Position numbers and translations under genes: made by a program
Notes under the pieces: generated by a model
What the model was told of the DNA's origin: nothing
Seen by the model: the letters and a program-made list of their open reading frames with translations, nothing else
Databases searched by the model: none
In this document: positions 1,852 to 59,883 of the stretch, in pieces
Layout of the letters: every line of letters starts with the position of its first letter
Numbering within the stretch: the stretch's first letter is position 1
Assembly (NCBI RefSeq): GCF_039654945.1
Contig: NW_027361824.1
Coordinates: 10,974,001 to 11,038,000 of the forward strand
From: Dendrobates tinctorius
Lineage: Eukaryota
Reading direction: 5' to 3'
DNA: 64,000 nucleotides

Positions 1852-1927
1852 CTGGGGGAAAGGAATATAAGTGTGTAAGACGCTATTTAAAGGGGAATAC
1901 GCGCTATAAAAAGTGACGATGAAATAC

Positions 1928-2051
1928 CAGCAGATCCTGGAGGCGGATTATCCCCAGACACCACATCCTTGTAACGGTCCTTATGTCCTTCCAGATATTT
2001 CCACTCCTCCATGGAGAAGAAGACGGCGACGTCCTCGCACCGCACAGGAAT
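1928..2051 (-). CDS. KRAB-A box exon of a frog-type (XlCOF/XlCGF-like) zinc-finger gene
   Basis: 124-nt exon IPVRCEDVAVFFSMEEWKYLEGHKDRYKDVVSGDNPPPGSA with ttctcag / GTATTT; matches the KRAB-A consensus DVAVxFSxEEW. Confidence 0.9.
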
Positions 2052-2139: not shown

Positions 2140-2310
2140 CTCCTCGCCTGAACTGTGTGGGGTCTCGCCAGGTTCTGGGGTCTCCTCGTGTGCTGGGGAC
2201 GGACATGGACGTTCCTCGCTTGGAATTCGATCCTTGGTGGATACCTCTGATAAACATAACTGGCAGTCATCTGTGGATTGGTCGTTCTGTCTCTTCCTGA
2301 GGACAAAATC
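2140..2310 (-). CDS. KRAB zinc-finger gene, coding exon (DFVLRKRQ...PHSSGEE)
   Basis: 171 nt, gtacag / GTGGGC, phase 0/0; occupies the position of the DYTVVKK... exon of frog KRAB-ZNFs. Confidence 0.7.
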
Positions 2311-2364
2311 CTGTACGAGAAAGAACTGGTGTCACATGGTGGGGAAGCGTCGGATCCAAAACAC

Positions 2365-5300
2365 ATCCACATCAATATCTACATCCTGCCACCACTGATC
2401 CTCAATATCTACATCTTGCCACCACTGAACCTCAATATCTACATCCTGCCACCACTGATGCTCAATATCTACATCCTGCCGCCACTGATCCTCAATAACT
2501 ACATTAATATCTGCATCCTGCCGCCAGTGATCCCCAATATCTACTGTACATCCTGCCACCACTGATCCTCAATATCTACATCCTGCCACTGATCCTCAAT
2601 ATCTACATCCTGCCACTACTGATCCTCAATATCTACATCCTGCCACCACTGATCTTCAATATCTACATCCTGCCACCACTGATCCTCAATATCTACATCC
2701 TGCCACCACTGATCCGCAATATCTATATCCTGCCACCACTGATCCTCAATATCTACATCCTGCCACTGATCCTCAATATCTACATCCTGCTGCCACTGAT
2801 GCTCAATATCTACATCCTGCCACTACTGATCCTCAATATCTACATTAATATCTGCATCCTGCCGCCAGTGATCCCCAATATCTACATCCTGCTGCCACTG
2901 ATCCTCAATATCTACATCCTGTTGCCACTGATCCTCAACATCCACATCCTGCCATCACTGATCCTCAATATCTACATCCTGCCACCACTGATCCTCAATA
3001 TCTACATCCTGCCACCACTGATCCTCAATATCTAAATCCTGCCACCACCGATCCTCAATATCTAAATCCTGCCATCATTGATCCTCAATATCTACATACT
3101 GACACCACTGATCCTCAATATCTACATCCTGCCGCCACTGATCCTCAATATCTACATCCTGCCACCACTGAACCTCAATATCTACATCCTGCCGCCACTG
3201 ATCCTCAATATCTACATCCTGCCACTGATCCTCAATATCTACATCCTGCCACTGATCCTCAATATCTACATCCTGCCACCACTGATCCTCAATATCTACA
3301 TCCTGCCACCACTGATCCGCAATATCTATATCCTGCCACCATTGATCCTCAATATCTACTGTACATCCTGCCACCACTGATCCTCAATATCTACATCCTG
3401 CCACTGATCCTCAATATCTACATCCTGCCGCCACTGATGCTCAATATCTACATCCTGCCACTACTGATCCTCAATATCAACATCCTGCTGCCACTGGTCT
3501 TCAATATCTACATCCTGCCGCCACTGATGCTCAATATCTACATCCTGCCACCACTGATCCTCAATATCTACATCCTGTTGCCACGGATCCTCAACATCCA
3601 CATCCTGCCATCACTGATCCTCAATATCTACATCCTGCCGCCACTGATCCTCAATATCTACATCCTGCCACCACTGATCCTCAATATCTAAATCCTGCCA
3701 CCACCGATCCTCAATATCTAAATCCTGCCATCATTGATCCTCAATATCTACATCCTGACACCACTGATCCTCAATATCTACATTAATATCTACATCCTGC
3801 CATCACTGATCCTCAATATCTACATCCTGCCGCCACTGATCTTCAACATCTACAGTACAGACCAAAAGTTTGGACACACCTTCTCATTCAAAGAGTTTTC
3901 TTTATTTTCATGACTATGAAAATTGTAGATTCACTCTGAAGGCATCAAAACTATGAATTACCACATGTGGAATTATATAATTAACAAAAAAGTGTGAAAC
4001 AACTGAAAATATGTCTTATATTCTAGGTTCTTCAAAGTAGCCACCTTTTGCTTTGATTTCTGCTTTGCACACTCTTGGCATTCTCTTGATGAGCTTCAAG
4101 AGGTAGTCACCGGAAATGGTTTTCACGTCACAGGTGTGCCCTGTCAGGTTTAATAAGTGGGATTTCTTGCCTTATAAATGAGGTTGGGACCATCAGTTGT
4201 GTTGTGCAGAAGTCTGGTGGATACACAGCTGATAGTCCTACTGAATAGACTGTTAGAATTTGTATTATGGCAAGAAAAAAGCAGCTGAGTAAAGACAAAC
4301 GAATGTCCATCATTACTTTAAGAAATGAAGGTCAGTCAGTCCAAAAAATTGGGAAAACTTTGAAAGTGTCCCGAAGTGCAGTGGCAAAAACCATCAAGCG
4401 CTACAAAGAAACTGGCTCACATGAGGACCGCCCCAGGAAAGGAAGACCAAGAGTCACCTCTACTGCGGAGGATAAGTTCATCCGAGTCACCAGCCTCAGA
4501 AATCGCAGGTTAACAGCAGCTCAGATTAGAGACCAGGTCAATGCCACACAGAGTTCTAGTAGCAGACACATCTCTACAACAACTGTTAAGAGGAGACTTT
4601 GTGCAGCAGGCCTTCATGGTAAAATAGCTGCTAGGAAACCACTGCTAAGGACAGGCAACAAGCAGGAGAGACTTGTTTGGGCTAAAGAACACAAGGAATG
4701 GACATTAGACCAGTGGAAATCTGTGCTTTGGTCTGATGAGTCCAAATTTGAGATCTTTGGTTCCAACCACCGTGTCACCGACGCAGAAAAGGTGAACGGA
4801 TGGACTCTACATGCCTGGTTCCCACAGTGAAGCATGGAGGAGGAGGTGTGGGGGAGCTTTGCTGGTGACACTGTTGGGGATTTATTCAAAATTGAAGGCA
4901 TACTGAACCAGCATGGCTACCACAGCATCTTGCAGCGGCATGCTCTTCCATCCGGTTTGTGTTTAGTTGGACCATCATTTATTTTTCAACAGGACAATGA
5001 CCCCAAACACACCTCCAGGCTGTGTAAGGGCTATCTGACCAAGAAGGAGAGTGATGGGGTGCTACGCCAGATGACCTGGCCTCCACAGTCACCAGACCTG
5101 AACCCAATCGAGATGGTTTGGGGTGAGCTGGACCGCAGAGTGAAGGCAAAAGGGCCAACAAGTGCTAAGCATCTCTGGGAACTCCTTCAACACTGTTGGA
5201 ACACCATTTCCGGTGACTACCTCTTGAAGCTCATCAAGAGAATGCCAAGAGTGTTCAAAGCAGTAATCAAAGCAAAAGGTGGCTACGTTGAAGAACCTAG

Positions 5301-6610
5301 AATATAAGACATATTTTCAGTTGTTTCACACTTTCTTGTTAATTATATAATTCCACATGTGTTAATTCATAGTTTTGATGCCTTCAGAGTGAATCTACAA
5401 TTTTCATATTCATGAAAATAAAGAAAACTCTTTGAATGAGAAGGTGTGTCCAAACTTTTGGTCTGTACTGTACATCCTGCCACCACTGATCCTCAATATC
5501 TACATCCTGCCGCCACTGATCCTCAATATCTACATCCTGTCGCTACTGATCCTCAATATCTACATCCTGTCGCCACTGATCCTCAATATCTACATCCTGC
5601 CGCCACTGATCCTCAATATCTACATTAATATCTGAATCCTGCCACCGTTGATCCTCAATATCTACATCCTGCCACCGCTGATCCACAATATCTACATCCT
5701 GCCGCCACTGATCCTCAATATCAACATCCTGCCACCACTGATCCTCAATATCTACATCCTGCAGCCACTGATCCTCAATATCTACATTAATATCTACATT
5801 CTGCCACCGCTGATCCACAATATCTACATCCTGCCACCACTGATCCTCAATATCTACATTAATATCTGCATCCTGCCGCCACTGATCCTCAATATCTACA
5901 TCCTGCCACCACTGATCCTCAATATCTACATCCTGCCACCGCTGAACCCCAATATCTACATCCTGCCACCACTGATTCCCAATATCTACATCCTGCCACC
6001 ACTGATCCTCAATATCTACATTAATATCTGAATCCTGCCACCGCTGACCTCAATATCTACATCCTGCCACCACTGATCCTCAATATCTACATTAATATCT
6101 ACATTCTGCCACCGCTGATCCACAATATCTACATCCTGCCACCACTGATCCTCAATATCTACATTAATATCTGCATCCTGCCGCCACTGATCCTCAATAT
6201 CTACATCCTGCCACCACTGATCCTCAATATCTACATCCTGCCACCGCTGAACCCCAATATCTACATCCTGCCACCACTGATTCCCAATATCTACATCCTG
6301 CCACCACTGATCCTCAATATCTACATTAATATCTGAATCCTGCCACCGCTGATCCTCAATATCTACATCCTGCCACCACTGATCCTCAATATCTACATTA
6401 ATATCTACATTCTGCCACCGCTGATCCACAATATCTACATCCTGCCACCACTGATCCTCAATATCTACATCCTGCCACCGCTGAACCCCAATATCTACAT
6501 CCTGCCACCGCTGAACCCCAATATCTACATCCTGCCACCACTGATTCCCAATATCTACATCCTGCCGCCGCTGATCCTCAATATCTACATCAATACCTAC
6601 ATCCTGCCAA
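2365..6610. repeat. 30-bp minisatellite (CATCCTGCCACCACTGATCCTCAATATCTA)n, interrupted by a Tc1 element
   Basis: Direct tandem array with variant units; it produces the LNIYILPPLI / DVDIEDQWWQ ORFs. Confidence 0.97.
3853..5470 (+). mobile_element. Tc1/mariner DNA transposon, frameshifted transposase
   Basis: TA on both sides; ~270-bp inverted repeats starting CAGTACAGACCAAAAG; transposase split over 4267-4830 and 4834-5307 ([22 protein letters not shown]). Confidence 0.95.
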
Positions 6611-6970: not shown

Positions 6971-7042
6971 CAGAGAATGGTGTAAGAAGTCTGAGACCCG
7001 TCCGTGCTCCGTACAGACATGCATGATCCTGAGACGAGGGCG

Positions 7043-10000
7043 GATCTGTGGAGGACGCACTGTTATGGGGGATCTGTGGATGACGCACTGTTATGGGGGA
7101 TCTGTGGAGGACGCACTGTTATGGGGGATCTGTGGAGGACGCACTGTTATGGGGGATCTGTGGGTGACGCACTGTTATGGGGGATCTGTGGGTGACGCAC
7201 TGTTATGGGGAATCTGTGGGTGACGCACTGTTATGGGGGATCTGTGGGTGACGCGCTGTTATGGGGATCTGTGGAGGACGCACTGTTATGGGGATTTGTG
7301 GAGGACGCACTGTTATGGGGGATCTGTGGAGGATGCACTGTTATGGGGACCTGTGGGTGACGCACTGTTATGGGGGATCTGTGGATGATGCACTGTTATG
7401 GGAGATCTGTGGAGGACGCACTGTTATGGGGATCTGTGGAGGACGCACTGTTATGGGGATCTGTGGAGGACGCACTGTTATGGGGGATCTGTGGGTGACG
7501 CACTGTTATGGGGGATCTGTGGGTGATGCACTGTTATGGGGGATCTGTGGGTGACGCACTGTTATGGGGGATCTGTGGGTGACGCGCTGTTATGGGGGAT
7601 CTGTGGGTGACGCGCTGTTATGGGGGATCTGTGGAGGACGCGCTGTTATGGGGATTTGTGGAGGATGCACTGTTATGGGGGATCTGTGGAGGATGCACTG
7701 TTATGGGGACCTGTGGGTGACGCACTGTTATGGGGGATCTGTGGATGACGCACTGTTATGGGAGATCTGTGGAGGACGCACTGTTATGGGGATCTGTGGA
7801 GGACGCACTGTTATGGGGGATCTGTGGGTGACGCACTGTTATGGGGGATCTGTGGGTGATGCACTGTTATGGGGGATCTGTGGGTGACGCACTGTTGTGG
7901 GGGATCTGTGGGTGACGCACTGTTATGGGGGCACTGAGGGTGACGCACTTATGGCGGATCTGTGGGTGACGCACTGTTATGGGCGATCTGTGGGTGACGC
8001 ACTGTTATGGGGGATCTGTGGGTGACGCACTGTTATGGGGGATCTGTGGGTGACGCACTGTTATGGGGGATCTGTGGGTGACGCACTGTTATGGGGGATC
8101 TGTGGGTGACGCACTGTTATGGGGGATCTGTGGGTGACGCACTGTTATGGCGGATCTGTGGGTGACACATTGTTATGGGGGATGTGGGTGACGCACTGTT
8201 ATGGGGATCTGTGGGTGATGCACTGTTATGGGGGATCTGTGGAAGACGCACTGTTATAGGGGATCTGTGGGTGACGCACTGTTATGGGGATCTGTGGGTG
8301 ATGCACTGTTATGGGGGATCTGTGGAGGACGCACTGTTATAGGGGATCTGTGGGTGACGCACTGTTGTGGGGGATCTGTGGGTGACGCACTGTTGTGGGG
8401 GCACTGAGGGTGACGCACTTATGGCGGATCTGTGGGTGACGCACTGTTATGGGGGATCTGTGGGTGACGCACTGTTATGGGGGATCTGTGGGTGACGCGC
8501 TGTTATGGGGGATCTGTGGGTGACGCGCTGTTATGGGGGATCTGTGGGTGACGCGCTGTTATGGGGGATCTGTGGGTGACGCGCTGTTATGGGGGATCTG
8601 TGGGTGACGCGCTGTTATGGGGGATCTGTGGGTGACGCGCTGTTATGGGGGATCTGTGGGTGACGCGCTGTTATGGGGGATCTGTGGGTGACGCGCTGTT
8701 ATGGGGGATCTGTGGGTGACGCGCTGTTATGGGGGATCTGTGGGTGACGCGCTGTTATGGGGGATCTGTGGGTGACGCGCTGTTATGGGGGATCTGTGGG
8801 TGACGCGCTGTTATGGGGGATCTGTGGGTGACGCGCTGTTATGGGGGATCTGTGGGTGACGCGCTGTTATGGGGGATCTGTGGGTGACGCGCTGTTATGG
8901 GGGATCTGTGGGTGACGCGCTGTTATGGGGGATCTGTGGGTGACGGGCTGTTATGGGGGATCTGTGGGTGACGGGCTGTTATGGGGGATCTGTGGGTGAC
9001 GCGCTGTTATGGGGGATCTGTGGGTGACGCGCTGTTATGGGGGATCTGTGGGTGACGCGCTGTTATGGGGGATCTGTGGGTGACGCGCTGTTATGGGGGA
9101 TCTGTGGGTGACGCGCTGTTATGGGGGATCTGTGGGTGACGCGCTGTTATGGGGGATCTGTGGGTGACGCGCTGTTATGGGGGATCTGTGGGTGACGCGC
9201 TGTTATGGGGGATCTGTGGGTGACGCGCTGTTATGGGGGATCTGTGGGTGACGCGCTGTTATGGGGGATCTGTGGGTGACGCGCTGTTATGGGGGATCTG
9301 TGGGTGACGCGCTGTTATGGGGGATCTGTGGGTGACGCGCTGTTATGGGGGATCTGTGGGTGACGCGCTGTTATGGGGGATCTGTGGGTGACGCGCTGTT
9401 ATGGGGGATCTGTGGGTGACGCGCTGTTATGGGGGATCTGTGGGTGACGCGCTGTTATGGGGGATCTGTGGGTGCGCACTGTTATGGGGGATCTGTGGGT
9501 GACGGGCTGTTATGGGGGATCTGTGGGTGCGCACTGTTATGGGGGATCTGTGGGTGACGCGCTGTTATGGGGGATCTGTGGGTGACGAGCTGTTATGGGG
9601 GATCTGTGGGTAACGAGCTGTTATGGGGGATCTGTGGGTGACGCGCTGTTATGGGAGATCTGTGGGTGACGCGCTGTTATGGGGGATCTGTGGGTGACGC
9701 GCTTTTATGGGGGATCTGTGGGTGACGCGCTGTTATGGGGGATCTGTGGGTGACGCGCTGTTATGGGGGATCTGTGGATGACGCGCTGTTATGGGGGATC
9801 TGTGGGTGACGCGCTGTTATGGGGGATCTGTGGGTGACGCGCTGTTATGGGGGATCTGTGGGTGACGCGCTGTTATGGGGGATCTGTGGGTGACGCGCTG
9901 TTATGGGGGATCTGTGGGTGACGCGCTGTTATGGGGGATCTGTGGGTGACGCGCTGTTATGGGGGATCTGTGGGTGACGCGCTGTTATGGGGATCTGTGG

Positions 10001-10930
10001 GTGACGCACTGTTATGGGGGATCTGTGGGTGACGCACTGTTATGGGGGATCTGTGGGTGACGCGCTGTTATGGGGGATCTGTGGGTGACGCACTGTTATG
10101 GGGGATCTGTGGGTGACGCACTGTTATGGGGATCTGTGGGTGACGCACTGTTATGGGGATCTGTGGGTGACGCACAGTTATGGGGGATCTGTGGGTGACG
10201 CACTGTTATGGGGATCTGTGGGTGACGCACTGTTATGGGGGATCTGTGGGTGACGCACTGTTATGGGGATCTGTGGGTGACGCACTGTTATGGGGGATCT
10301 GTGGGTGACGCACTGTTATGGGGATCTGTGGGTGACGCACTGTTATGGGGATCTGTGGGTGACGCACTGTTATGGGGGATCTGTGGGTGACGCACTGTTA
10401 TGGGGGATCTGTGGGTGACGCACTGTTATGGGGATCTGTGGGTGACGCACTGTTATGGGGATCTGTGGGTGACGCACTGTTATGGGGGATCTGTGGGTGA
10501 CGCACTGTTATGGGGATCTGTGGGTGACGCACTGTTATGGGGGATCTGTGGGTGACGCACTGTTATGGGGATCTGTGGGTGACGCACTGTTATGGGGGAT
10601 CTGTGGGTGACGCACTGTTATGGGGATCTGTGGGTGACGCACTGTTATGGGGATCTGTGGGTGACGCACTGTTATGGGGGATCTGTGGGTGACGCACTGT
10701 TATGGGGGATCTGTGGGTGACGCACTGTTATGGGGGATCTGTGGGTGACGCACTGTTATGGGGATCTGTGGGTGACGCGCTGTTATGGGGGATCTGTGGG
10801 TGACGAGCTGTTATGGGGGATCTGTGGGTGACGCACTGTTATGGGGGATCTGTGGGTGCGCACTGTTATGGGGGATCTGTGGGTGACGAGCTGTTATGGG
10901 GGATCTGTGGGTGACGCACTGTTATGGGGG
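7043..10930. repeat. 28-bp G-rich minisatellite (ATGGGGGATCTGTGGGTGACGC[A/G]CTGTT)n
   Basis: About 3.9-kb tandem array filling most of intron 1 of the KRAB gene. Confidence 0.97.
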
Positions 10931-11509: not shown

Positions 11510-12740
11510 TGGAAGCCGGTACCTGCACTAAAAGGGAATGGACCAGAGGAAGCCGGTACCTGTACTTAAAGGGAATGGACCAGAGGAAGCCGGTACCTGC
11601 ACTAAAAGGGAATGGACCAGAGGAAGCCGGTACCTGTACTTAAAGGGAATGGACTAGAGGAAGCCGGTACCTGCACTAAAAGGGAATGGACCAGAGGAAG
11701 CCGAGACCTGCACTATAAGGGAACGGACTACTGGAGGAAGCCGGGACCTATACTTAAAGGGAACGGACCAATAGAGGAAGCTGGGACCTGCACTTAAAGG
11801 GAACGGACCACTGGAGGAAGCCGGGACCTGCACTTAAAGGGAACGGACCGCTAGAGGAAGCCGGGACCTGCACTATAAGGGAATGGACCACTGGAGGAAG
11901 CCGGGACCTGTACTTAAAGGGAACGGACCAATAGAGGAAGCCGGGACCTGCACTAAAAGGGAATGGACCAATAGAGGAAGCCGGTACCTGCACTATAAGG
12001 GAACGGACCAATAGAGGAAGCCGGGACCTGCACTAAAAGGGAATGGATCAATAGAGGAAGCCGGTACCTGCACTATAAGGGAACGGACCAATAGAGGAAG
12101 CCGGGACCTGCACTAAAAGGGAATGGATCAATAGAGGAAGCCAGGACCTGCACTATAAGGGAACGGACCACTGGAGGAAGCCGGGACCTGTACTTAAAGG
12201 GAACGGACCAATAAAGGAAGCCGGTACCTGCACTTAAAGGGAATGGACCGCTAGAAGAAGCCGGTACCTGCACTTAAAGGGAACGGACCGCTAGAAGAAG
12301 CCGGGACCTGCACTTAAAGGGAACGGACCGCTAGAGGAAGCCGGGACCTGCAGTTAAAGGGAACGGACCGCTAGTGGAAGCCGGGACCTGCACTTAAAGG
12401 GAACGGACCGCTAGTGGAAGCCGGGACCTGCACTTAAAGGGAACGGACCGCTAGTGGAAGCCGGTACCTGCACTTAAAGGGAACGGACCGCTAGTGGAAG
12501 CCGGTACCTGCACTTAAAGGGAACGGACCGCTAGAGGAAGCCGGTACCTGCACTTAAAGGGAACGGACCGCTAGAGGAAGCCGGTACCTGCACTTAAAGG
12601 GAACGGACCGCTAGAGGAAGCCGGTACCTGCACTTAAAGGGAACGGACCGCTAGAGGAAGCCGGTACCTGCACTTAAAGGGAACGGACCGCTAGAGGAAG
12701 CTGGTACCTGCACTTAAAGGGAATGGACCAATAGAGGAAG
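11510..12740. repeat. ~40-bp minisatellite (GAGGAAGCCGGTACCTGCACTTAAAGGGAACGGACCGCTA)n
   Basis: Tandem array in COA6 intron 1. Confidence 0.95.
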
Positions 12741-12870
12741 CCGGTACCTGTGCTTAAAGGAAATGTCCATATTGCACCTAAGTCCTCAGATTACAAAGTG
12801 AATCAGCAGAAAAATGAAGCCAACATCACCGCTGATCACTTGGGTCTTAATATTGTCTCCTCACCCTTAA

Positions 12871-18508: not shown

Positions 18509-20103
18509 CAGTGGGGGGGAAAAAAGTATTTAGTCAGCCCCCAATTGTGCAAGTTCTCCCACTTATAAAGATGAGAGCGGCCTGTAACTGGCATCATAGG
18601 TGACCACAACTATGAGAGTCACAATGAGAAAACAAATCCAGAAAATCACCTTGTCTGATTTGGTAAGATTTATTTTGCCAATTATGGTGGAAAATAAGTA
18701 TTTGGTCATTAACAAAACTTCATCTCAATATTTTGTTATATATCCTTTGTTGGCAATGGCAGAGGTCAAACGTTTTCTGTAAGTCTTCACAAGGTTGGCA
18801 CACACTGTTGTTGGTATGTTGGCCCATTCCTCCATGCAGATCTATAGAGCAGTGATGTTTTGGGTCTGTCGCTGGGCAACACAGAATTTCAACTCCCTCC
18901 AAAGGTTTTCTATGGAGATGAGATCTGGAGACTGGCTAGGCCACACCAGGACGTTCATATGCTTCTTATGAAGCCACTCCTTCGTTGCCCTGGCAGTGTG
19001 CTTGGGATCATGATCATGCTGAAAGACCCATCCACATTTCATCTTCAATGCCCTTGCTGATGGAAGGAGGTTTGCACTCAAAATCTCACAATACATGGCC
19101 CCATTCATTTTCACGTACACAGATCAGTCATCCTGGTCCCTTTGCAGAGAAACAGCCCCAAAGCATGATGCTGCCACCCCCATGCGTCACAGTAGGTATG
19201 GTGTTCTTTGGATGCAACTAAGCATTCTGTCTCTTCCAAACATGAAGAGTTTTGTTTCTACCAAACAGTTCTACTTTGGTTTCATCAGACCATAGGACAT
19301 TCTCCCAATACTCTTATGGATAATCTAAATGCTCTCTAGCAAACTTCAGACGGCCCGGACATGTACTGGCTTAAGCAGGGGGACACGTCTGGCACTGCAG
19401 GATCTGAGTCCCTGGCGGCGTAGTGTGTTACTGATGGTAGCCTTTGTTACATTGGTCCCAGCTCTATGCAGGTCATTCACTAGGTCCCCCCGTGTGGTTC
19501 TTGGATTTTTGCTTACCGTTCTTGTGATCATTTTGACCCCACGAGGTGAGATCTAGCGGGGAACCCCAGATGGAGGGAGATTATCAGTGGTCTTGTATGT
19601 CTTCCATTTTCTTATTATTGCTCCCAAAGTTGATTTCATCACACCAAGCTGCTTGCCTATTGCAGATTCAGTCTTCCCAGCCTGGTGCAGGGCTACAATT
19701 TTGTTTCTGGTGTCCCTCGACAGCTCTTTGGTCTTCACCATAGTGGAGTTTGGAGTGTGACTGTTTGAGGCTGTGGACAGGTGACTTATACTGATAACAA
19801 GGTCAAACAGGAGCCATTACTACAGGTAATGAGTGGAGGAAAGAGGAGCCTCTTAAAGAAGAAGTTACAGGTCTGTGAGAGCCAGAAATCTTGCATGTTT
19901 TAGGTGACCAAACACTTATTTTCCACCATAATTTGCAGAATAAATCTTACCAAATCCGACAAGGTGATTTTCTGGATTTGTTTTCTCATTTTGACTCTCA
20001 TAGTTGCGGTCGACCTATGATGCCAATTACAGGCCGCTCTCATCTTTATAAGTGGGAGAACTTGCACAATTGGGGGCTGACTAAGTACTTTTTTTCCCCA
20101 CTG
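18509..20103 (-). mobile_element. Tc1/mariner transposon, disrupted transposase
   Basis: TA flanks; inverted repeats CAGTGGGG...AAAAAGTA.TTAGTCAGCC; ORF fragments MVKTKELS (19553-19741), 19346-19531, 18842-19120 ([16 protein letters not shown]). Confidence 0.93.
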
Positions 20104-21325: not shown

Positions 21326-23596
21326 GCAAATAGCGCTCCGTTCCTCCTCAGTCTCTCCGTAGTACTGTACAGCCACATAAGGGGTATTGCCACGTTCAGT
21401 AGAAATTGTGGGACAAATTTTGGTGCCATTTTACCCACTTCCTGTGTGAAATCTAAAATATTTGGCTAAAACAAGATTTTGGTGGTAATAATGTAATTAT
21501 TTTTTTCTTCACTTCCCAATGGTATAAAATTCTGTGACTCACCCATGGTGTCAATATGATCACTGCACCCCTAGATGAATTCATTGAGAGGTGTAGTTGG
21601 TAAAATGGGGTCACTTATGGGGGGGTTCTGCTGTTTTGGCACCTCAGGGGCTCTCCCAGTGGGTCATGGCACCTGCAAACCATAGCAGTAAAATCTGGCG
21701 CTCCTTACCTTCTGAGCTTTGCATTGTGCCTGAAAAATATTTCCCGATTACATGTAGGGTATTGGCGCACTCAGGAAAAATGGACCTCAGTTTGTTGTGA
21801 AAAAATTTCCTATTAGCCCTTAGAAAAATTAAAAACTTGGGGCTAAAACATTTTAGTGGTAAAAATGTAATTATTCTTTCTTCATCGCTCAGTGATATAA
21901 CACTGTGAGGCACATGTGGAGTCAATATGATCACTGCACCCCTAGATGAATTTATTGGGCAGTGTAGTTTCTATAATGAGTTCACATATAGGGGGTTTCT
22001 GTTGTTCTGGCACCTCAGGGGTTCTGCCAACGTGACATGGCCCCCTCAAACCATTCCAGCAAAATCTCAACTCCAATATGGTGCCGCTTCCCTTCTGAGC
22101 TTTGCTCTGTGCCTCCTATTCCCCCACATATGAGGTATCAGCGTACTCAAGAGAAATTCCACAACAACACTTGGGGTCCAATTTCTCCTGTTACCCTTGG
22201 TAAAATAAAACATAGGGGGCGAAAAGAATTTTTGTGGAAAAAAATGATTTTTTTTATTTTTACGGGTCTACATTATAAACTTCTGTGAAGCACTTGGGGG
22301 TTCAAAGTTCTCACCACAAATCTAAATAAGTTTCTTAGGGGGGTCTAGTTTCCAAAATGGTGTCACTTGTGGGGAGTTTCCACTTTTTAGGCACATCAGG
22401 GGCTCTGCAAACGCAACATGGCGTCCGATCAATTCCAGCTAATTTTGCATTGAAAAGTCAAACGGCGCTCCTTCCCTTCTGAGCTCTGCCATGCGCCCAA
22501 ACAGTAGTTTACCCCACATATGGGGCATCAGCATACTCAGGACAAAGTGCGCAACAACTTTTGGGGTCCAATTTCTCCTGTTACCCTTGGGAAAATAAAA
22601 AAAAATTGGATATGAAGTAATTTTTTTGTGAAAAAAAGTTAAAGGCTCATTTTTTTTTTTTAAACATTCAAAAAATTCCTGTGAAGCACCTGAAGGGTTA
22701 ATAAATTTCTTTAATGTGGTTTTGAGCACCTCGAGGGGTGCAGTTTTTAGAATGGTGTCACTTTTGGGTATTTTCTATCATATAGACCCCTCAAAGTGGC
22801 TTCAAATGTGAGGTGGTCCCTAAAAAAATGGTTTTGTAAAGTTTGTTATAAAAATGAGAAATTGCTGTTTAATTAACCCTTATAACTTCCTAACAAAAAA
22901 AAATGTGGTTCTAAAATTGTGCTGATGTAAAGTAAACATGTGGGAAATGTTACTTATTAAGTTTTTTGTGTGCCATATCTCTGTGATTTAAGGGCATAAA
23001 AATTCAAATTTGAAAAATTGCGAAATTTTCACCAAATTTCTGTTTTTCTTCACAAATAAACGCAAGTTATATGAATGAAATTTTACCACTAACATGAAGG
23101 ACAATATGTCATGAGAAAACAGTGTCAGAGTCACCGGGATCCATGGAAGCGTTCCAGAGTTATGACCTCATAAAGAGACAGTGGTCAGAATTGTAAAAAT
23201 TGGCCCGGTCATTAACGTGCAAGTTTTTCCATCGATGGAGCGGTGTGAGGGCTTTTTTTTATGGCGATCTGTGTATTTAATTGGTGCCATGTTCTGTTTC
23301 ATGCAACACTGATCACTTTATATTGTATTTTTGGGTTGCAGAGATGAAAAAAATGGCAATTTTGGCTTTTTATTTTTCTTTAACATTTATGGATTAAATA
23401 ATTTAGATATTTTTATACCTTGGACTGTTACAAGCACAATTGTTCCCAATAAGATTTTTTTTTTTTTTAAATAAAAAAAAAAAATGTTATTTCCTAGTTT
23501 CCCTGAGAGATGTTGAACATGAGAGTATTACAATATACAGTAAAATCATTCTCCAAAATTGCGGCAATAAAAGGGGCGTCCCTCTGTATGGCAACG

Positions 23597-24675
23597 GCAC
23601 ACTACAACCTCGACGTGGACGCGCCAAGGGCCACTACAACCTTGACGTGGGCGCACCAAGGGCCACTACAACCTCGAAGTGGGCGCACCAAGGGTCACTA
23701 CAACCTCGACGAGGGCGCATCAAGGGCAACTACAACCTCGACGAGGGCGCACCAAGGGCCACTACAACCACGACGAGGGCGCACCAAGGGTCACTACAAC
23801 CTCGACGAGGGCGCACCAAGGGCCACTACAACGACGTGGGCGCACCAAGGGCCACAAACTCGACATGGGCGCACCAAGGGTCACTACAACCTCGACGTGG
23901 GCGCACCAAGGGTCACTACAACCTCGACGTGGGCGCACCAAGGGCCACTACAACCACAATGTGGGCGCACCAAGGGCCACTACAACCTCGACGAGGGCGC
24001 ACCAAGGGCCACTACAACCACGATGTGGACGCACCAAGGGCCACTACAACCTCGACGTGGGCGCACCAAGGGCCACTACAACCATGACGAGGGCGCACCA
24101 AGGGCCACTACAACCTCGACGTGGGCGCACCAAGGGCCACTACAACCACGACCAGGGCGCACCAAGGGTCACTACAACCTCGACGAGGGCGCACCAAGGG
24201 CCACTACAACGACGTGGGCGCGCCAAGGGCCACAAACTCGACGTGGGCGCGCCAAGGGCCACTACAACCTCGACGTGGGCGCACCAAGGGCCACTACAAC
24301 CTCGACGTGGGCGCACCAAGGGCCACTACAACCTCGACGTGGGCGCACCAAGGGCCACTACAACCTCGACGAGGGCGCACCAAGGGTCACTACAACCTCG
24401 ACGAGGGCGCACCAAGGGTCACTACAACCTCGACGTGGGCGCACCAAGGGCCACTACAACCATGTCGAGGGCGCACCAAGGGCCACTACAACCACGATGT
24501 GGACGCACCAAGGGCCACTACAACCTCGACGTGGGCGCACCAAGGGCCACTGCAACCACGACGTGGGCGCACCAAGGGCCACTACAACCACGATGTGGAC
24601 GCACCAAGGGCCACTACAACCTCGGCGTGGGCGCACCAAGGGCCACTACAACCTCGACGTGGGTGCACCAAGGGG
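23597..24675. repeat. 32-bp minisatellite (CCACTACAACCTCGACGTGGGCGCACCAAGGG)n
   Basis: Tandem array, largely stop-free on the plus strand. Confidence 0.95.
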
Positions 24676-25159: not shown

Positions 25160-25680
25160 TGCTCTCTCGGCTCTCCCCGCGCGCTCCCTTCCCTCTCTCG
25201 GCTCCCCCCGCGCGCTCCCTTCCCTCTCTCGGCTCCCCCCGCGCGCTCCCTTCCCTCTCTCGGCTCCCCCCGCGCGCTCCCTTCCCTCTCTCGGCTCTCC
25301 CCGCGCGCTCCCTTCCCTCTCTCGGCTCTCCCCGCGCGCTCCCTTCCCTCTCTCGGCTCTCCCCGCGCGCTCCCTTCCCTCTCTCGGCTCTCCCCGCGCG
25401 CTCCCTTCCCTCTCTCGGCTCTCCCCGCGCGCTCCCTTCCCTCTCTCGGCTCTCCCCGCGCGCTCCCTTCCCTCTCTCGGCTCTCCCCGCGCGCTCCCTT
25501 CCCTCTCTCGGCTCTCCCCGCGCGCTCCCTTCCCTCTCTCGGCTCTCCCCGCGCGCTCCCTTCCCTCTCTCGGCTCTCCCCGCGCGCTCCCTTCCCTCTC
25601 TCGGCTCTCCCCGCGCGCTCCCTTCTCTCTCTCGGCTCTCCCCGCGCGCTCCGTTCTCTCTCGGCTCTCCCCGCGCGCCC
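25160..25680. repeat. 31-bp pyrimidine-rich minisatellite (CTCTCGGCTCTCCCCGCGCGCTCCCTTCCCT)n
   Basis: Near-perfect tandem units. Confidence 0.95.
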
Positions 25681-26711
25681 AGTTCTCTCTCTTCTATCTC
25701 CTCTCTCTTCTTATCCTCTATAGTCTCCGCTCTGATCCTGTCTCGCTCTTTCCACCACATAAGACGCAGTAACACAAGGATGGAAAAATACAGTTTTTAA
25801 TGACATGAATGAAACAGTTAACCCCTTCTTGTTTTTAAACTTAATAAAAATAAAAAATAATAATTCACCGACTTTCTAACTGACCATGATAATTAATCAA
25901 GAATGATATTTTGGGATGTGGACTGATTTCAGAAAAGTTGGATAAAAACACAAAGTTGCTGTTTTTTTTTTTTTTTTGCAATATCAGGCGACTTTTATAC
26001 TGGCGTAAAGCATCCAAATGATGACAGCTGAGGGTTTGTTACAATTGTATCCAGCTTAGACAATCAGCTCTGCAGGACACCTGCGCTGATACACTGTAAC
26101 AAACCATTAGGACAGACAAGATGTCATGCATTTGCGTCATGGGGCAAGTACCAATTTGCATCTCTCCAGCTGTTGTGATAACTACAGCTCCACTCAGGCA
26201 CTGACAGCAGCAGCATGTTGGGAGCCATAACGTGGCCCAGCTGGGGGGCTGCCGACTCCTGGATACATCAGTGACGCACCCTCAGCTTTGGAGACCTTGG
26301 ATGTAAATGGAAAGGTTTTTATTCCCTGACAGCAAGCAGCGGTAGGATAAAAGTTGCAGAACTTTTCGTTACACGAGAATTCAAGGTACGCAGCTCTGCC
26401 GCACGTCTGGCGAGTCTAATGGGACGCTCCATTTTTCCCTTTCCTGCCCATAGGTTTAGATTAAATCGGTGTTAATCGCCCTCTGCCGCAGTCTTTTTAG
26501 ACCGACTGCTTTGGTGACAATATCGCTTATAACCGCTGCAGCCAATCTCTGAGCTCAGCAGTGTAGTGTGGTTTGTAATATCAGCATCACAGCTAAGCCT
26601 AGTGACTGGCCGCAGCGGTCACGTGATCTGTAGTTGTGCCATCAGATGGGAAGAACCCCCCCTTTAGCGATGTCCGTAGCACAGTGCGCCCCCCCCCCCA
26701 GTCCGTGCTCC

Positions 26712-37460: not shown

Positions 37461-40400
37461 AATTATAGTAGATATATTACTGTATACAGGGGCAGTATTA
37501 TAGTAGTTATATTCTTGTACATAGGAGCAGTATTATAGTAGTTATATTCTTGTATATAGGGGCAGTATTATAGTAGTTACAGAATATTCTTGTACACAGG
37601 GGGCAGTATTATAGTAGTTATATTATTGTACATAGGAGCAGTATTATAGTAGTTATATTCTTGTACATAGGAGCAGTATTATAGTAGTTATATTCTTGTA
37701 CATAGGAGCAGTATTATAGTAGTTATATTCTTGTACATAGGAGCAGTATTATAGTAGTTATATTCTTGTATATAGGGGGCAGTATTATAGTAGTTATATT
37801 ATTGTACATAGGGGGCAGTATTATAGTAGTTATATTCTTGTACATAGGGGGCAGTATTATAGTAGTTATATTCTTGTACATAGGGGGCAGTATTATAGTA
37901 GTTATATTCTTGTACATAGGAGCAGTATTATAGTAGTTACAGAATATTCTTGTACATAGGGGGCAGTATTATAGTAGTTATATTATTGTATATAGGAGCA
38001 GTATTATAGTAGTTATATTCTTGTATATAGGGGCAATATTATAGTAGTTATATTATTGTACATAGGGGGCAGTATTATAGTAGTTATATTCTTGTACATA
38101 GGGGGCAGTATTATAGTAGTTATATTCTTGTACATAGGGGGCAGTATTATAGTAGTTATATTCTTGTACATAGGAGCAGTATTATAGTAGTTATATTATT
38201 GTACATAGGGGCAGTATTATAGTAGTTATATTCTTGTATATAGGGGGCAGTATTATAGTAGTTATATTCTTGTATATAGGGGCAGTATTATAGTAGTTAT
38301 ATTCTTGTACATAGGAGCAGTATTATAGTAGTTATATTATTGTACATAGGGGCAGTATTATAGTAGTTATATTCTTGTATATAGGGGGCAGTATTATAGT
38401 AGTTATATTCTTGTACATAGGGGCAGCATTATAGTAGTTATATTCTTGCACATAGGGGCAGTATTATAGTAGTTATATTCTTGTATATAGGGGGCAGTAT
38501 TATAGTAGTTATATTCTTGTACATAGGGGGCAGTATTATAGTAGTTATATTCTTGTACATAGGAGCAGTATTATAGTAGTTATATTATTGTACATAGGGG
38601 CAGTATTATAGTAGTTATATTATTGTATACAGGGGGCAGTATTATAGTAGTTATATTCTTGTATATAGGGGCAGTATTATAGTAGTTATATTCTTGTACA
38701 TAGGGGGCAGTATTATAGTAGTTATATTCTTGTACATAGGAGCAGTATTATAGTAGTTATATTCTTGTATATAGGGGGCAGTATTATAGTAGTTATATTC
38801 TTGTACATAGGGAGCAGTATTATAGTAGTTATATTCTTGTACATAGGAGCAGTATTATAGTAGTTATATTCTTGTATATAGGAGGCAGTATTATAGTAGT
38901 TATATTCTTGTACATAGGAGGCAGTATTATAGTAGTTATATTCTTGTACATAGGGGCAGCATTATAGTAGTTATATTCTTGCACATAGGGGCAGTATTAT
39001 AGTAGTTATATTATTGTACATAGGGGCAGTATTATAGTAGTTATATTCTTGTATATAGGGGGCAGTATTATAGTAGTTATATTCTTGTACATAGGGGGCA
39101 GTATTATAGTAGTTATATTATTGTACATAGGGGCAGTATTATAGTAGTTATATTCTTGTATATAGGGGGCAGTATTATAGTAGTTATATTCTTGTACATA
39201 GGGGGCAGTATTATAGTAGTTATATTCTTGTACATAGGGGCAGTATTATAGTAGTTATATTCTTGTACATAGGGGGCAGTATTATAGTAGTTATATTCTT
39301 GTATATAGGGGCAGTATTATAGTAGTTATATTCTTGTACATAGGGGGCAGTATTATAGTAGTTATATTATTGTACATAGGGGCAGTATTATAGTAGTTAT
39401 ATTCTTGTATATAGGGGGCAGTATTATAGTAGTTATATTCTTGTACATAGGGGCAGCATTATAGTAGTTATATTCTTGCACATAGGGGCAGTATTATAGT
39501 AGTTATATTCTTGTACATAGGGGGCAGTATTATAGTAGTTATATTCTTGTACATAGGGGGCAGTATTATAGTAGTTATATTCTTGTACATAAAGGCAGTA
39601 TTATAGTAGTTATATTCCTGTACATAGGAGCAGTATTATAATAGCTATATTCTTGTACATAGGGAGCAGTATTATAGTGGTTATATTCTTGTACATAGGG
39701 AACAGTATTATAGTAGTTATATTATTGTACATAGGGAACAGTATTATAGTAGTTATATTATTGTACATAGGAGCAGTATTATAGTAGTTATATTATTGTA
39801 CATAGGGAACAGTATTATTGTAGTTATATTATTGTACATAGGGGCAGTCTTATAGTAGTTATATTCTTGTACATAGGGGGCAGTGTTATAGTAGTTATAT
39901 TCTTGTACATAGGAGGCAGTATTATAGTAGTTATATTCTTGTACATAGGGGCAGTATTATAGTAGTTATATTCTTGTATATAGGGGGCAGTATTATAGTA
40001 GTTATATTCTTGTACATAGGGGCAGTATTATAGTAGTTATATTCTTGTACATAGGAGCAGTATTATAGTAGTTATATTCTTGTATATAGGGGGCAGTATT
40101 ATAGTAGTTATATTCTTGTACATAGGGGCAGTATTATAGTAGTTATATTCTTGTACATAGGAGCAGTATTATAGTAGTTATATTCTTGTACATAAAGGCA
40201 GTATTATAGTAGTTATATTCCTGTACATAGGAGCAGTATTATAATAGCTATATTCTTGCACATAGGGAGCAGTATTATAGTGGTTATATTCTTGTACATA
40301 GGGAACAGTATTATAGTAGTTATACTATTGTACATAGGGAACAGTATCATAGTAGTTATATTATTGTACATAGGAGCAGTATTATAGTAATTATATTATT

Positions 40401-43400
40401 GTACATAGGGGGCAGTATTATAGTAGTCATATTCTTGTACATAGGGGCAGTATTATAGTAGTTATATTCTTGTGCATAGGGGCAGTATTATAGTAGTTAT
40501 ATTCCTGTACATAGGAGCAGTATTATAATAGCTATATTCTTGTACATAGGAGCAGTATTATAATAGCTATATTCTTGTACATAGGGGCAGTATTATAGTA
40601 GTTATATTCTTGTACATAGGGGGCAGTATTATAGTAGTTATATTCTTGCACATAAAGGCAGTATTATAGTAGTTATATTCTTGTACATAGAAGCAGTATT
40701 ATAGTAGTTATATTCTTGTACATAAAGGCAGTATTATAGTAGTTATATTCTTGTACATAGGGGCAGTATTATAGTAGTTATATTCTTGTACATAGGAGCA
40801 GTATTATAGTAGCTATATTCTTGTATATAGGGGCAGTATTATAGTAGTTACAGAATATTCTTGTACATAGGGGGTAGTATTATAGTAGTTATATTCTTGT
40901 ACATAGGAGCAGTATTATAGTAGTTATATTCTTGTACATAGGAGCAGTATTATAGTAGCTATATTCTTGTATATAGGGGGCAGTATTATAGTAGTTATAT
41001 TATTGTATATAGGGGGCAGTATTATAGTAGTTATATTCTTGTACATAGGGGGCAGTATTATAGTAGTTATATTCTAGTACATAGGAGCAGTATTATAGTA
41101 GTTACAGAATATTCTTGTACATAGGGGGCAGTATTATAGTAGTTATATTATTGTATATAGGAGCAGTATTATAGTAGTTATATTCTTGTATATAGGGGCA
41201 GTATTATAGTAGTTATATTCTTGTACATAGGGGGCAGTATTATAGTAGTTATATTCTTGTACATAGGAGCAGTATTATAGTAGTTATATTATTGTACAAA
41301 GGGGCAGTATTATAGTAGTTATATTCTTGTATATAGGGGGCAGTATTATAGTAGTTATATTCTTGTATATAGGGGCAGTATTATAGTAGTTATATTCTTG
41401 TACATAGGGGGCAGTATTATAGTAGTTATATTCTTGTACATAGGAGCAGTATTATAGTAGTTATATTATTGTACATAGGGGCAGTATTATAGTAGTTATA
41501 TTCTTGTATATAGGGGGCAGTATTATAGTAGTTATATTCTTGTACATAGGGGCAGCATTATAGTAGTTATATTCTTGCACATAGGGGCAGTATTATAGTA
41601 GTTATATTCTTGTATATAGGGGGCAGTATTATAGTAGTTATATTCTTGTACATAGGGGGCAGTATTATAGTAGTTATATTCTTGTACATAGGAGCAGTAT
41701 TATAGTAGTTATATTATTGTACATAGGGGCAGTATTATAGTAGTTATATTATTGTATATAGGGGGCAGTATTATAGTAGTTATATTCTTGTATATAGGGG
41801 CAGTATTATAGTAGTTATATTCTTGTACATAGGGGGCAGTATTATAGTAGTTATATTCTTGTACATAGGAGCAGTATTATAGTAGTTATATTATTGTACA
41901 TAGGGGCAGTATTATAGTAGTTATATTCTTGTATATAGGGGGCAGTATTATAGTAGTTATATTCTTGTACATAGGGGCAGCATTATAGTAGTTATATTCT
42001 TGCACATAGGGGCAGTATTATAGTAGTTATATTCTTGTATATAGGGGGCAGTATTATAGTAGTTATATTCTTGTACATAGGGGGCAGTATTATAGTAGTT
42101 ATATTCTTGTACATAGGGGGCAGTATTATAGTAGTTATATTCTTGTACATAAAGGCAGTATTATAGTAGTTATATTCCTGTACATAGGAGCAGTATTATA
42201 ATAGCTATATTCTTGTACATAGGGAGCAGTATTATAGTGGTTATATTCTTGTACATAGGGAACAGTATTATAGTAGTTATATTATTGTACATAGGGAACA
42301 GTATTATAGTAGTTATATTATTGTACATAGGAGCAGTATTATAGTAGTTATATTATTGTACATGGGAGCAGTATTATAGTAGCTATATTATTGTACATAG
42401 GGGCAGTATTATAGTAGTTATATTATTGTACATAGGGAACAGTATTATAGTAGTTATATTATTGTACATAGGGGCAGTCTTATAGTAGTTATATTCTTGT
42501 ACATAGGGGGCAGTGTTATAGTAGTTATATTCTTGTACATAGGAGGCAGTATTATAGTAGTTATATTCTTGTACATAGGGGCAGTATTATAGTAGTTATA
42601 TTCTTGTATATAGGGGGCAGTATTATAGTAGTTATATTCTTGTACATGGGGCAGTATTATAGTAGTTATATTCTTGTACATAGGGGGCAGTATTATAGTA
42701 GTTATATTCTTGTACATAAAGGCAGTATTATAGTAGTTATATTCCTGTACATAGGAGCAGTATTATAATAGCTATATTCTTGCACATAGGGAGCAGTATT
42801 ATAGTGGTTATATTCTTGTACATAGGGAACAGTATTATAGTAGTTATATTATTGTACATAGGGAACAGTATTATAGTAGTTATATTATTGTACATAGGAG
42901 CAGTATTATAGTAGTTATATTATTGTACATAGGGGGCAGTATTATAGTAGTTATATTCTTGTACATACGGGCAGTATTATAGTAGTTATATTCTTGTGCA
43001 TAGGGGCAGTATTATAGTAGTTATATTCCTGTACATAGGAGCAGTATTATAATAGCTATATTCTTGTACATAGGAGCAGTATTATAATAGCTATATTCTT
43101 GTACATAGGGGCAGTATTATAGTAGTTATATTCTTGTACATAGGGGCAGTATTATAGTAGTTATATTCTTGTACATAGGGGCAGTATTATAGTAGTTATA
43201 TTCCTGTACATAGGAGCAGTATTATAATAGCTATATTCTTGTACATAGGGGCAGTATTATAGTAGTTATATTCTTGTACATAGGGGGCAGTATTATAGTA
43301 GTTATATTCTTGTACATAGGGGGCAGTATTATAGTAGTTATATTCTTGTACATAGGAGCAGTATTATAGTAGTTATATTCTTGTTCATAGGGGGCAGTAT

Positions 43401-43975
43401 TATAGTAGTTATATTCTTGTACATAGGGGCTGTATTATAGTAGTTACATTCTTGTACATAGGAGCAGTATTATAGTAGTTATATTCTTGTACATAGGGGC
43501 TGTATTATAGTAGTTACATTCTTGTACATAGGAGCAGTATTATAGTAGTTATATTCTTGTACATAGGGGCTGTATTATAGTAGTTATATTCTTGTACATA
43601 GGAGCAGTATTATAGTAGTTATATTCTTGTACATAGGGGGCAGTATTATAGTAGTTATATTCTTGTACATAGGGGGCAGTATTATAGTAGTTATAGTCTT
43701 GTACATAGGGGCAGTATTATAGTAGTTATATTCTTGTACATAGGGGCTGTATTATAGTAGTTATATTCTTGTACATAGGAGCAGTATTATAGTAGTTATA
43801 TTATTGTACATAGGGGCAGTATTATAATAGTTATATTCTTGTATATAGGAGGCAGTATTATAGTAGTTATATTCTTGTATATAGGAGGCAGTATTATGGT
43901 AGTTATATTCTTGTACATAGGGAGCAGTATTATAGTACTTATATTATTGTACATAGGGGGCAGTATTATAGTATT
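37461..43975. repeat. 33-34-bp AT-rich minisatellite (GGGGCAGTATTATAGTAGTTATATTCTTGTACATA)n
   Basis: 6.5-kb array occupying almost all of PAAF1 intron 4, with higher-order duplicated variant blocks. Confidence 0.98.
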
Positions 43976-48635: not shown

Positions 48636-49130
48636 GTGGCCGCTCTTTGCGCAGCGTGGGGGGCTCCGCTGGCCGCTCTTTGCGCAGCGTGGGGGGCTCC
48701 GCTGGCCGCCCTTTGCGCAGCGTGGGGGGCTCCGCTGGCCGCCCTTTGCGCAGCGTGGGGGGCTCCGCTGGCCGCCCTTTGCGCAGCGTGGGGGGCTCCG
48801 CTGGCCGCCCTTTGCGCAGCGTGGGGGGCTCCGCTGGCCGCCCTTTGCGCAGCGTGGGGGGTTCCGCTGGCCGCCCTTTGCGCAGCGTGGGGGGCTCCGC
48901 TGGCCGCCCTTTGCGCAGCGTGGGGGGCTCCGCTGGCCGCCCTTTGCGCAGCGTGGGGGGCTCCGCTGGCCGCCCTTTGCGCAGCGTGGGGGGCTCCGCT
49001 GGCCGCTCTTTGCGCAGCGTGGGGGGCTCCGCTGGCCGCTCTTTGCGCAGCGTGGGGGGCTCCGCTGGCTGCTCTTTGCGCAGCGTGGGGGGCTCCGCTG
49101 GCTGCTCTTTGTGCAGCGTGGGGGGCTCTG
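48636..49130. repeat. 33-bp GC-rich minisatellite (GCGCAGCGTGGGGGGCTCCGCTGGCCGCCCTTT)n
   Basis: About 15 near-identical units. Confidence 0.95.
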
Positions 49131-49693: not shown

Positions 49694-51288
<1,595 letters not shown>

Positions 51289-59870: not shown

Positions 59871-59883
59871 GCAGAGTCTTAGG

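What the first reader, a model, noticed from the sequence alone, without database searches (positions are those of the whole stretch)
2542..3363. Tc1 excision footprints in a minisatellite, at the same TA that holds a Tc1 insertion
Seen: normal units read AATATC-TA-CATCC, but units at 2542-2548 and 3357-3363 read AATATC-TACTGTA-CATCC. The Tc1 at 3853-5470 sits in exactly that unit TA and ends ...CTG|TA. Established: TACTGTA/TACAGTA is the canonical Tc1/Sleeping Beauty-type excision footprint. Inference: the array is a repeated landing pad that records insertion and excision (local hopping), and footprints can then be copied by array turnover. The two footprints share downstream context and could be one duplicated event.
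Basis: partly seen in the sequence, partly recalled or inferred. Interest (0 to 1): 0.7.

Follow-up and report, generated by a model that had tools for sequence, protein, structure and literature searches.

The report
Tc1 excision scar copied in minisatellite
Two units of a frog 30-base tandem repeat carry the exact 5-base scar that a Tc1-type jumping gene leaves when it cuts itself out, and a dead Tc1 copy sits at the same spot of a nearby unit; the scar is real, but it is probably one event copied by repeat turnover, and it is ordinary in a genome full of Tc1 elements.

Summary
A 30-bp minisatellite (2374-3852 and 5471-6608) is split by a 1618-bp defective Tc1-like element (3853-5470) with a TA duplication and ends CAG...CTG. 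Two units (2536-2570 and 3351-3385) are 35 bp long because the unit's second TA reads TA-CTG-TA.

This is the canonical 7-bp Sleeping Beauty-type excision footprint (PMC6943129). It is not a local duplication. It occurs nowhere else in the array. In the whole window, the only other complex 5-bp insertions with an exact "empty" paralogue are four footprint-like copies in a different array.

The two scars are probably one event. With the scars removed, the two sites are each other's best exact match among 79 in-register sites (75 bp; only 1.2% of pairs reach this). Both are followed by one of only five 27-bp units.

The "landing pad / local hopping" idea is not supported. About 40% of the array's TAs belong to this class. 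That leaves about two independent events in 2.6 kb, which is near the background Tc1 density. Public contigs showed no empty allele.

The scan already reported a larger case in the same genome (s1-376914). This is a known mechanism and a tidy natural example, of low to moderate interest.

The parts
2374..3852 (.). 30-bp minisatellite, part A (consensus AATATCTACATCCTGCCACCACTGATCCTC), up to the left TA of the Tc1 target duplication
   Evidence: Tandem Repeats Finder, period 30/60/90; unit list
2536..2570 (.). 35-bp scarred unit 1; TACTGTA at 2542-2548 (TA + CTG + TA)
   Evidence: 5-bp insertion with exact empty paralogues
2571..2597 (.). 27-bp unit directly after scar 1; part of the 75-bp block shared with scar 2
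3351..3385 (.). 35-bp scarred unit 2; TACTGTA at 3357-3363; identical to unit 1
3386..3412 (.). 27-bp unit directly after scar 2
3851..3852 (.). left copy of the TA target-site duplication, in unit AACATC-TA
   Evidence: TACAGTA at 3851
3853..5470 (+). 1618-bp Tc1-like DNA transposon, ends CAGTACAGACC...GGTCTGTACTG; defective copy
   Evidence: perfect 25-nt termini in inverted orientation; self-BLAST and translation; Pfam HTH_Tnp_Tc3_2 and DDE_3; family word depth 1e5-1e6 against about 7 for the unique flank
3853..4124 (+). left terminal inverted repeat (272 bp, 97.4% identical to the right one)
4267..5307 (+). transposase remnant; the frame is broken twice (near 4777 and near 4846-4850), where this copy lacks letters that most family copies have
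   Evidence: frames; loose ends and put-in letters at 4776-4779 and 4845-4850
5199..5470 (-). right terminal inverted repeat
5471..5472 (.). right copy of the TA target-site duplication
   Evidence: TACTGTA at 5466
5471..6608 (.). 30-bp minisatellite, part B (the same array continuing after the Tc1); no scarred units
2140..2312 (-). exon of the host gene; its acceptor lies about 62 bp from the array, so the array and Tc1 lie in the upstream intron
   Evidence: a contig of run X15 joins 2312..2140 to 2051..1927; GT-AG read
1927..2051 (-). KRAB-box exon of the host gene
   Evidence: Pfam KRAB, E=1.1e-6; spliced contig

Best explanation
A Tc1/Sleeping Beauty-type transposon once sat in the second TA (ATC-TA-CAT) of one unit of an intronic 30-bp minisatellite. 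It was cut out by transposase. The staggered cuts left 3-nt overhangs (CAG) on both flanks, and end-joining sealed them as TA-CTG-TA, which adds 5 bp. Array turnover (unequal exchange or gene conversion) then copied the scarred unit together with about 70 bp downstream, so the scar now appears twice (2542-2548 and 3357-3363).

The defective Tc1 at 3853-5470 is a separate insertion into the same kind of TA in another unit. It shows the 'filled' state, and ordinary units show the 'empty' state.

Shown directly:
- the sequence states (empty, filled, scarred);
- the match between the scar and the element's ends;
- the close relatedness of the two scarred blocks.

Inferred:
- that a transposase made the scar;
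- that the scar is one event;
- the order of events.

Nothing indicates that the array attracts Tc1 more than other DNA does.
For: - The scar sequence and position are exact.
- The canonical SB footprints are TACAGTA and TACTGTA, formed from 3-nt overhangs and end-joining (PMC6943129; bioRxiv 10.1101/659086).
- The resident element has a TA duplication, CAG...CTG ends, 272-bp inverted repeats and Tc1-type HTH and DDE domains.
- The window-wide scan found complex 5-bp insertions with an exact empty paralogue only as TA+C[AT]G-type events: two here and four in another array. There is no background of random 5-bp insertions.
- No other non-3n insertion occurs in 81 full units, and CTGTA occurs nowhere else in the array.
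- The Tc1 family is hugely abundant in this and related species. Tc1 elements are abundant and expressed in poison-frog germ cells (PMC6278860, PMC11152451).
- For a single event: the two scar sites are reciprocal best exact matches (75 bp against a next best of 53 or 57; 1.2% of 3081 pairs reach 75). Both precede one of only five 27-bp units (P 0.05-0.085), and both carry the same T variant.
Against: - No filled/scarred polymorphism at one and the same locus was seen, so excision is inferred and not observed. Only contigs were available.
- The 3-nt stagger has not been shown for this frog family.
- The upstream contexts of the two scars differ, and each has its own unscarred higher-order paralogue (2877, and the 2718/2748 junction). 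A copying event would therefore need a breakpoint right at the scarred unit, which leaves room for two independent events.
- A 2-bp microhomology deletion between the left TA and the TA inside the ...GTA|CTG element end would give the same product without transposase.
Confidence: 0.75

Rival explanations
1. Two independent excisions at the same unit TA. On this reading the array is a repeatedly used landing pad, and the resident Tc1 may be the very element that hopped locally from one of the scar sites.
For: - There are three Tc1-related states within 1.3 kb, all at the ATC-TA-CAT site.
- The upstream contexts of the two scars differ and map to different higher-order positions.
- Local hopping is established for Sleeping Beauty (general knowledge).
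- Earlier scan notes report other scars close to Tc1 copies in this genome (s1-381626, s1-376914; unchecked, and subject to ascertainment bias).
Against: - The two scars are reciprocal nearest neighbours, with 75 bp identical (1.2% of pairs reach this), the same rare 27-bp neighbour and the same T variant.
- The shared TA class is about 40% of all TAs in the array.
- The expected Tc1 load of 2.6 kb at background density is already 0.2-0.4 (PMC11152451).
- Flanks of other family copies look AT-rich, unlike this unit (loose-end consensus at 3851; weak evidence).
Confidence: 0.15
2. The scar was not made by transposase. It is either a spontaneous 5-bp insertion, or a microhomology-mediated deletion that removed all but the last 3 nt of a resident Tc1 (TA ... 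GTA|CTG-TA), later duplicated.
For: The right Tc1 junction reads ...GTACTG-TACATCC, so a deletion between the left TA and the internal TA reproduces the scar exactly. Nothing in the sequence distinguishes the two routes.
Against: - A random 5-bp insertion hits a canonical scar with probability of about 5e-4 (my estimate).
- CTGTA is not a local duplication.
- A precise 1613-bp deletion on 2 bp of homology is far rarer than transposase excision, which gives this product as its main outcome (PMC6943129).
- All complex 5-bp insertions in the window are of the TA+C[AT]G type.
Confidence: 0.06
3. An assembly or sequencing artefact created the 5-bp insertions.
For: Minisatellites are hard to assemble. 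No contig listed is shown bridging either scar.
Against: A complex 5-bp, non-homopolymer insertion that happens to be a canonical footprint, seen twice, is not a known error mode. Contigs of the same species cover the bins with no 5-bp omission listed, though that run may be the assembly's own source.
Confidence: 0.02

Closest known systems
Canonical Sleeping Beauty / Tc1-like excision footprint (TAC(A/T)GTA)
   Same: It lies at a TA and adds exactly 5 bp: the 3 terminal transposon nucleotides plus a second TA. The middle base is T, one of the two canonical outcomes. It matches the CAG/CTG ends of a resident Tc1-like element.
   Different: It is seen as a fixed natural scar in a frog germline genome, not in an excision assay. 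Excision itself was not observed, and the stagger of this frog family has not been tested.
Earlier scan finding s1-376914 (same genome, another piece): a minisatellite with 29 units carrying the 5-base Tc1 scar and a Tc1 at the same spot of a neighbouring unit
   Same: The phenomenon is the same: empty, filled and scarred states side by side in one array, with the scar amplified by array turnover.
   Different: This case has only two scarred units and a different array (no shared words found). I did not check that finding myself.
Paralogous 'empty site' analysis of transposon insertions, and higher-order repeat turnover in minisatellites
   Same: Neighbouring repeat units act as the empty-site reference. 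Unequal exchange copies a private variant together with its flank.
   Different: The variant that serves as a marker here is a transposon scar, not a point mutation.
Caenorhabditis elegans Tc1/Tc3 footprints (TACATA / TATGTA)
   Same: Same superfamily and the same logic: a staggered cut followed by end-joining at a TA.
   Different: The nematode elements leave 2-nt overhangs and so mostly 4-bp additions (cited within bioRxiv 10.1101/659086). No 4-bp variant occurs in this array.

Membership tests
SB-type Tc1/mariner excision footprint | Sits at a pre-existing TA, shown by an empty-site reference | tested here: met
   74 in-register units read ATC-TA-CAT, and the scarred units read ATC-TA-CTG-TA-CAT. 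Exact empty paralogues were found for both scars.
SB-type Tc1/mariner excision footprint | Adds the 3 terminal transposon nucleotides plus a second TA, giving 7-bp TACAGTA or TACTGTA | tested here: met
   TACTGTA at 2542 and 3357; definition from PMC6943129.
SB-type Tc1/mariner excision footprint | A transposon family with matching CAG...CTG ends and TA duplication is present in the genome | tested here: met
   The resident element at 3853-5470. The family is extremely abundant in this and related species.
SB-type Tc1/mariner excision footprint | Filled and scarred alleles at the same locus (excision demonstrated directly) | tested here: inconclusive
   Only Logan contigs were available. No joint skipping 3853-5470 and no allele lacking CTGTA was listed. 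Contigs show presence, not absence.
SB-type Tc1/mariner excision footprint | The family's transposase cuts the non-transferred strand 3 nt inside the element | not testable with these tools
   This needs a biochemical or cell-based excision assay.
Tc1/mariner DNA transposon (the resident element) | TA target duplication, terminal inverted repeats, and a transposase with paired-like HTH and DDE domains | tested here: met
   TA on both sides; 272-bp inverted repeats at 97.4% identity; HTH_Tnp_Tc3_2 at 3.3e-12 and DDE_3 at 6.2e-7, both above the curated cut-off; HTH_SB at 38.5 bits, below its cut-off of 43.
Tc1/mariner DNA transposon (the resident element) | Intact transposase frame (autonomous copy) | tested here: not met
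   The frame is broken twice, near 4777 and near 4846-4850. Family copies have extra letters there.
Insertion hot spot / local hopping record | More independent insertion events per TA than background, or non-random use of one TA | tested here: not met
   About two independent events remain. The TA class holds about 40% of 196 TAs. The background expectation is 0.2-0.4 elements per 2.6 kb (PMC11152451). The array is low-copy in the genome, so no genome-wide replicate exists for this unit.

The most novel reading that the evidence does not exclude
Minisatellites in this Tc1-saturated frog genome act as natural recorders, and perhaps preferred or locally re-used targets, of germline Tc1 traffic. 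The resident Tc1 would have hopped about 0.5 kb from the 3357 scar into the same TA of another unit. If so, arrays like this would let excision rates, reinsertion rates and local hopping be measured from genome sequence alone.
Probability: 0.12. Interest if true: 0.5.

Novelty: new member of a known kind. Interest (0 to 1): 0.27.

Why it matters
Cut-and-paste transposons leave scars that are normally invisible in a genome, because the pre-insertion sequence is unknown. In a tandem repeat the neighbouring units supply that reference, so the empty, filled and excised states can be read side by side. This confirms that Tc1-type elements have excised in the germline of this frog lineage, and not merely accumulated. 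It also gives a marker for following repeat turnover. The finding reveals no new mechanism and shows no effect on the host KRAB-box gene, since the array is intronic.

Tried and rejected
1. Global enrichment of TACTGTA/TACAGTA in the window: none (14 seen against about 19 expected). The other occurrences are unique DNA or substitution variants (for example 37478 and 60662 in the 35-bp arrays).

2. Non-canonical scars (additions of 2, 3 or 4 bp) in this array: none. Every unit is 30, 27, 12, 29 or 35 bp.

3. Reads as a test for an empty or scarred allele at the Tc1 site, and for alleles without CTGTA. Only assembled contigs were served. None of the listed joints bridges 3852 to 5471, and no 5-bp omission is listed, so this test gave no answer.

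4. A genome-wide collection of this 30-bp unit. Word depth over the array is close to that of the unique flank, so the array is essentially locus-specific. A search of earlier findings by sequence returned nothing.

5. The offset of 815 bp between the scars read as a higher-order period: rejected. The higher-order period is about 640-656 bp, and the in-register paralogues of both scars are unscarred.

6. The array as coding sequence. Two frames stay open because all other length variants are multiples of 3. However, a spliced contig places an acceptor downstream of the array, and the array frame ends in a stop before that exon.

7. An inner direct repeat of the IR/DR type in the Tc1 inverted repeat: only a weak match of 15 of 18, left open.

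8. Literature on excision footprints in minisatellites: a single review holds both terms. I found no prior description, but the library is incomplete.

Full report
**What is there**

The stretch 2374-6608 is one minisatellite with a 30-bp unit, consensus AATATCTACATCCTGCCACCACTGATCCTC. It is interrupted at 3853-5470 by a 1618-bp Tc1-like element. Splitting the array into units gives:
- 73 units of 30 bp;
- 5 units of 27 bp, which have lost one CCA;
- 12 partial units of 12 bp;
- one unit of 29 bp;
- exactly two units of 35 bp, at 2536-2570 and 3351-3385.

Both 35-bp units read AATATC-TA-CTG-TA-CATCC where the others read AATATC-TA-CATCC. CTGTA occurs nowhere else in the array except at the transposon end.

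**The transposon**

- The termini CAGTACAGACCAAAAGTTTGGACAC are perfect inverted copies.
- The inverted repeats run for 272 bp at 97.4% identity.
- TA flanks both ends (3851-3852 and 5471-5472), at the same unit position as the scars.
- The translated pieces match HTH_Tnp_Tc3_2 (3.3e-12) and DDE_3 (6.2e-7). The Sleeping Beauty HTH model scores just under its cut-off.
- The reading frame is broken twice, near 4777 and near 4846-4850. At both places most family copies carry extra letters. The copy is therefore non-autonomous.
- It differs from the species' majority sequence at 20 or more positions.
- The family is extremely abundant. Word depths are 1e5-1e6 over the element against about 7 over the unique flank, in this species and in two related ones. 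The tool warns that these figures are not copy numbers.
- Published poison-frog genomes report hundreds of thousands of Tc1 pieces, and Tc1 expression in oocytes (PMC6278860, PMC11152451).
- Earlier scan notes say this genome is a poison frog. I did not verify the species.

**Is it more than chance?**

The 7-mers themselves are not enriched in the window: 14 seen against about 19 expected. The argument rests on context.

I scanned the whole window for insertions of 1-12 bp whose removal restores a 26-mer found elsewhere in the window. Setting homopolymers and microsatellites aside, the only 5-bp insertions are:
- the two CTGTA units here;
- four copies of one variant in a 35-bp array (GTTA-CAGAA-TATTC), one letter away from a canonical TA-CAG-TA scar.

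So there is no background of arbitrary 5-bp insertions. A random 5-bp insertion in this unit would give a canonical scar at a TA with probability of about 5e-4 (my estimate). CTGTA is not a duplication of adjacent letters.

**Mechanism**

[quoted passage not shown] The flanks keep 3-nt overhangs, and end-joining yields the 7-bp footprints TACAGTA or TACTGTA (PMC6943129; bioRxiv 10.1101/659086). With ends CAG...CTG and a TA target, the expected product at this site is exactly what is seen.

The transposase origin is an inference. A deletion on 2 bp of microhomology between the left TA and the TA inside the ...GTA|CTG end would give the same letters, but it is a much rarer kind of event.

**One event or two?**

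I removed the scars and the Tc1 and compared all 79 in-register sites.
- The two scar sites are each other's best exact match: 75 bp (5 to the left, 70 to the right), against a next best of 53 and 57.
- Only 1.2% of the 3081 site pairs share that much.
- Both scars are followed by one of only five 27-bp units. The probability for the second scar, given the first, is 0.05-0.085.
- Both have the T variant.

Against this, the upstream contexts differ. Scar 1's upstream side matches the upstream side of the unscarred unit at 2877. Scar 2 is an extra unit relative to the 2718/2748 junction of the neighbouring higher-order copy. The higher-order period is about 640-656 bp, not the 815 bp that separates the scars.

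I read this as one scar later copied with about 70 bp of downstream sequence by unequal exchange or gene conversion. I put this at roughly 80%. Two independent events remain possible.

**Landing pad and local hopping**

With the scars counted as one event, the array records about two insertions: one excised and one resident.
- The array holds 196 TAs, and about 40% of them are of the ATC-TA-CAT class. Using the same class twice is therefore unremarkable.
- The window holds five Tc1/mariner relics in 64 kb.
- A published poison-frog genome has 897,264 Tc1 pieces in about 6.35 Gb (the size follows). Either density predicts 0.2-0.4 elements per 2.6 kb.
- The array is close to single-copy in the genome, so no genome-wide replicate of this unit exists.
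- The consensus flank of other family copies looks AT-rich, unlike this unit. This evidence is weak.

Local hopping from 3357 to 3851 is possible but untestable here. Earlier scan notes of scars near Tc1 copies (s1-381626, s1-376914) are subject to ascertainment bias and were not checked.

**Context**

A contig of run X15 joins 2312..2140 to 2051..1927 on the minus strand across an 88-bp GT-AG intron. The second exon is a KRAB box. The array starts about 62 bp upstream of the first exon's acceptor, so the array, the scars and the Tc1 are intronic. The contig's further 191 letters lie outside the stretch laid. No effect on the gene is indicated.

A related species has the flank up to the first array unit at about 93% identity, and another has similar units. 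The array therefore probably predates these species.

**Verdict**

The turnover-copy idea is supported, and the hot-spot and local-hopping ideas are not shown. The mechanism is textbook and the genome is saturated with Tc1. The scan has already reported a larger example on other DNA of this genome (s1-376914). This is a tidy natural example of low to moderate interest.

Noticed in passing
window 37579, 37939, 40850, 41104 (35-bp array 37462-43973): Four units carry the same 5-bp insertion, GTTA-CAGAA-TATTC against GTTA-TATTC. This is one letter away from a canonical TA-CAG-TA scar at the first TA. It may be a second, mutated or non-canonical Tc1-type scar amplified by array turnover. The flanks are not clearly closer to each other than those of random unit pairs.
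   Followed up: partly
window 1927-2051 and 2140-2312, minus strand: These are two exons of a KRAB-box gene, joined in a public contig across an 88-bp GT-AG intron. The 30-bp array begins about 62 bp upstream of the acceptor, so a minisatellite of more than 4 kb plus a Tc1 sits at the 3' end of the upstream intron.
   Followed up: partly
window 2374-6608: Apart from the two scars and one 29-bp unit, every length variant of the array is a multiple of 3 (27, 30, 30+12). Two frames therefore stay open for long stretches (minus strand EDQWWQDVDI, plus strand NIYILPPLIL). The minus frame ends in a stop before the exon. There is no evidence of coding.
   Followed up: partly
window ~18890-19352 (-), 47380-47674, 50351-51064, 59544-59915: Four older, diverged Tc1/mariner-like transposase relics were detected by translated comparison with the resident element, at 26-60% amino-acid identity.
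   Followed up: no
window 7042-10930, 11511-12760, 23592-24674, 25162-25692, 48637-49128, 60549-62886: The window is unusually rich in minisatellites, with units of 28, 40, 32, 31, 33 and 35 bp. The 35-bp array recurs in inverted orientation at 60549-62886.
   Followed up: no
window 3853-5470: The 272-bp inverted repeats of the Tc1 overlap the 3' end of the transposase coding region. There is a weak inner match to the terminal 18 nt at element position ~135-152, a possible IR/DR-type inner site.
   Followed up: partly
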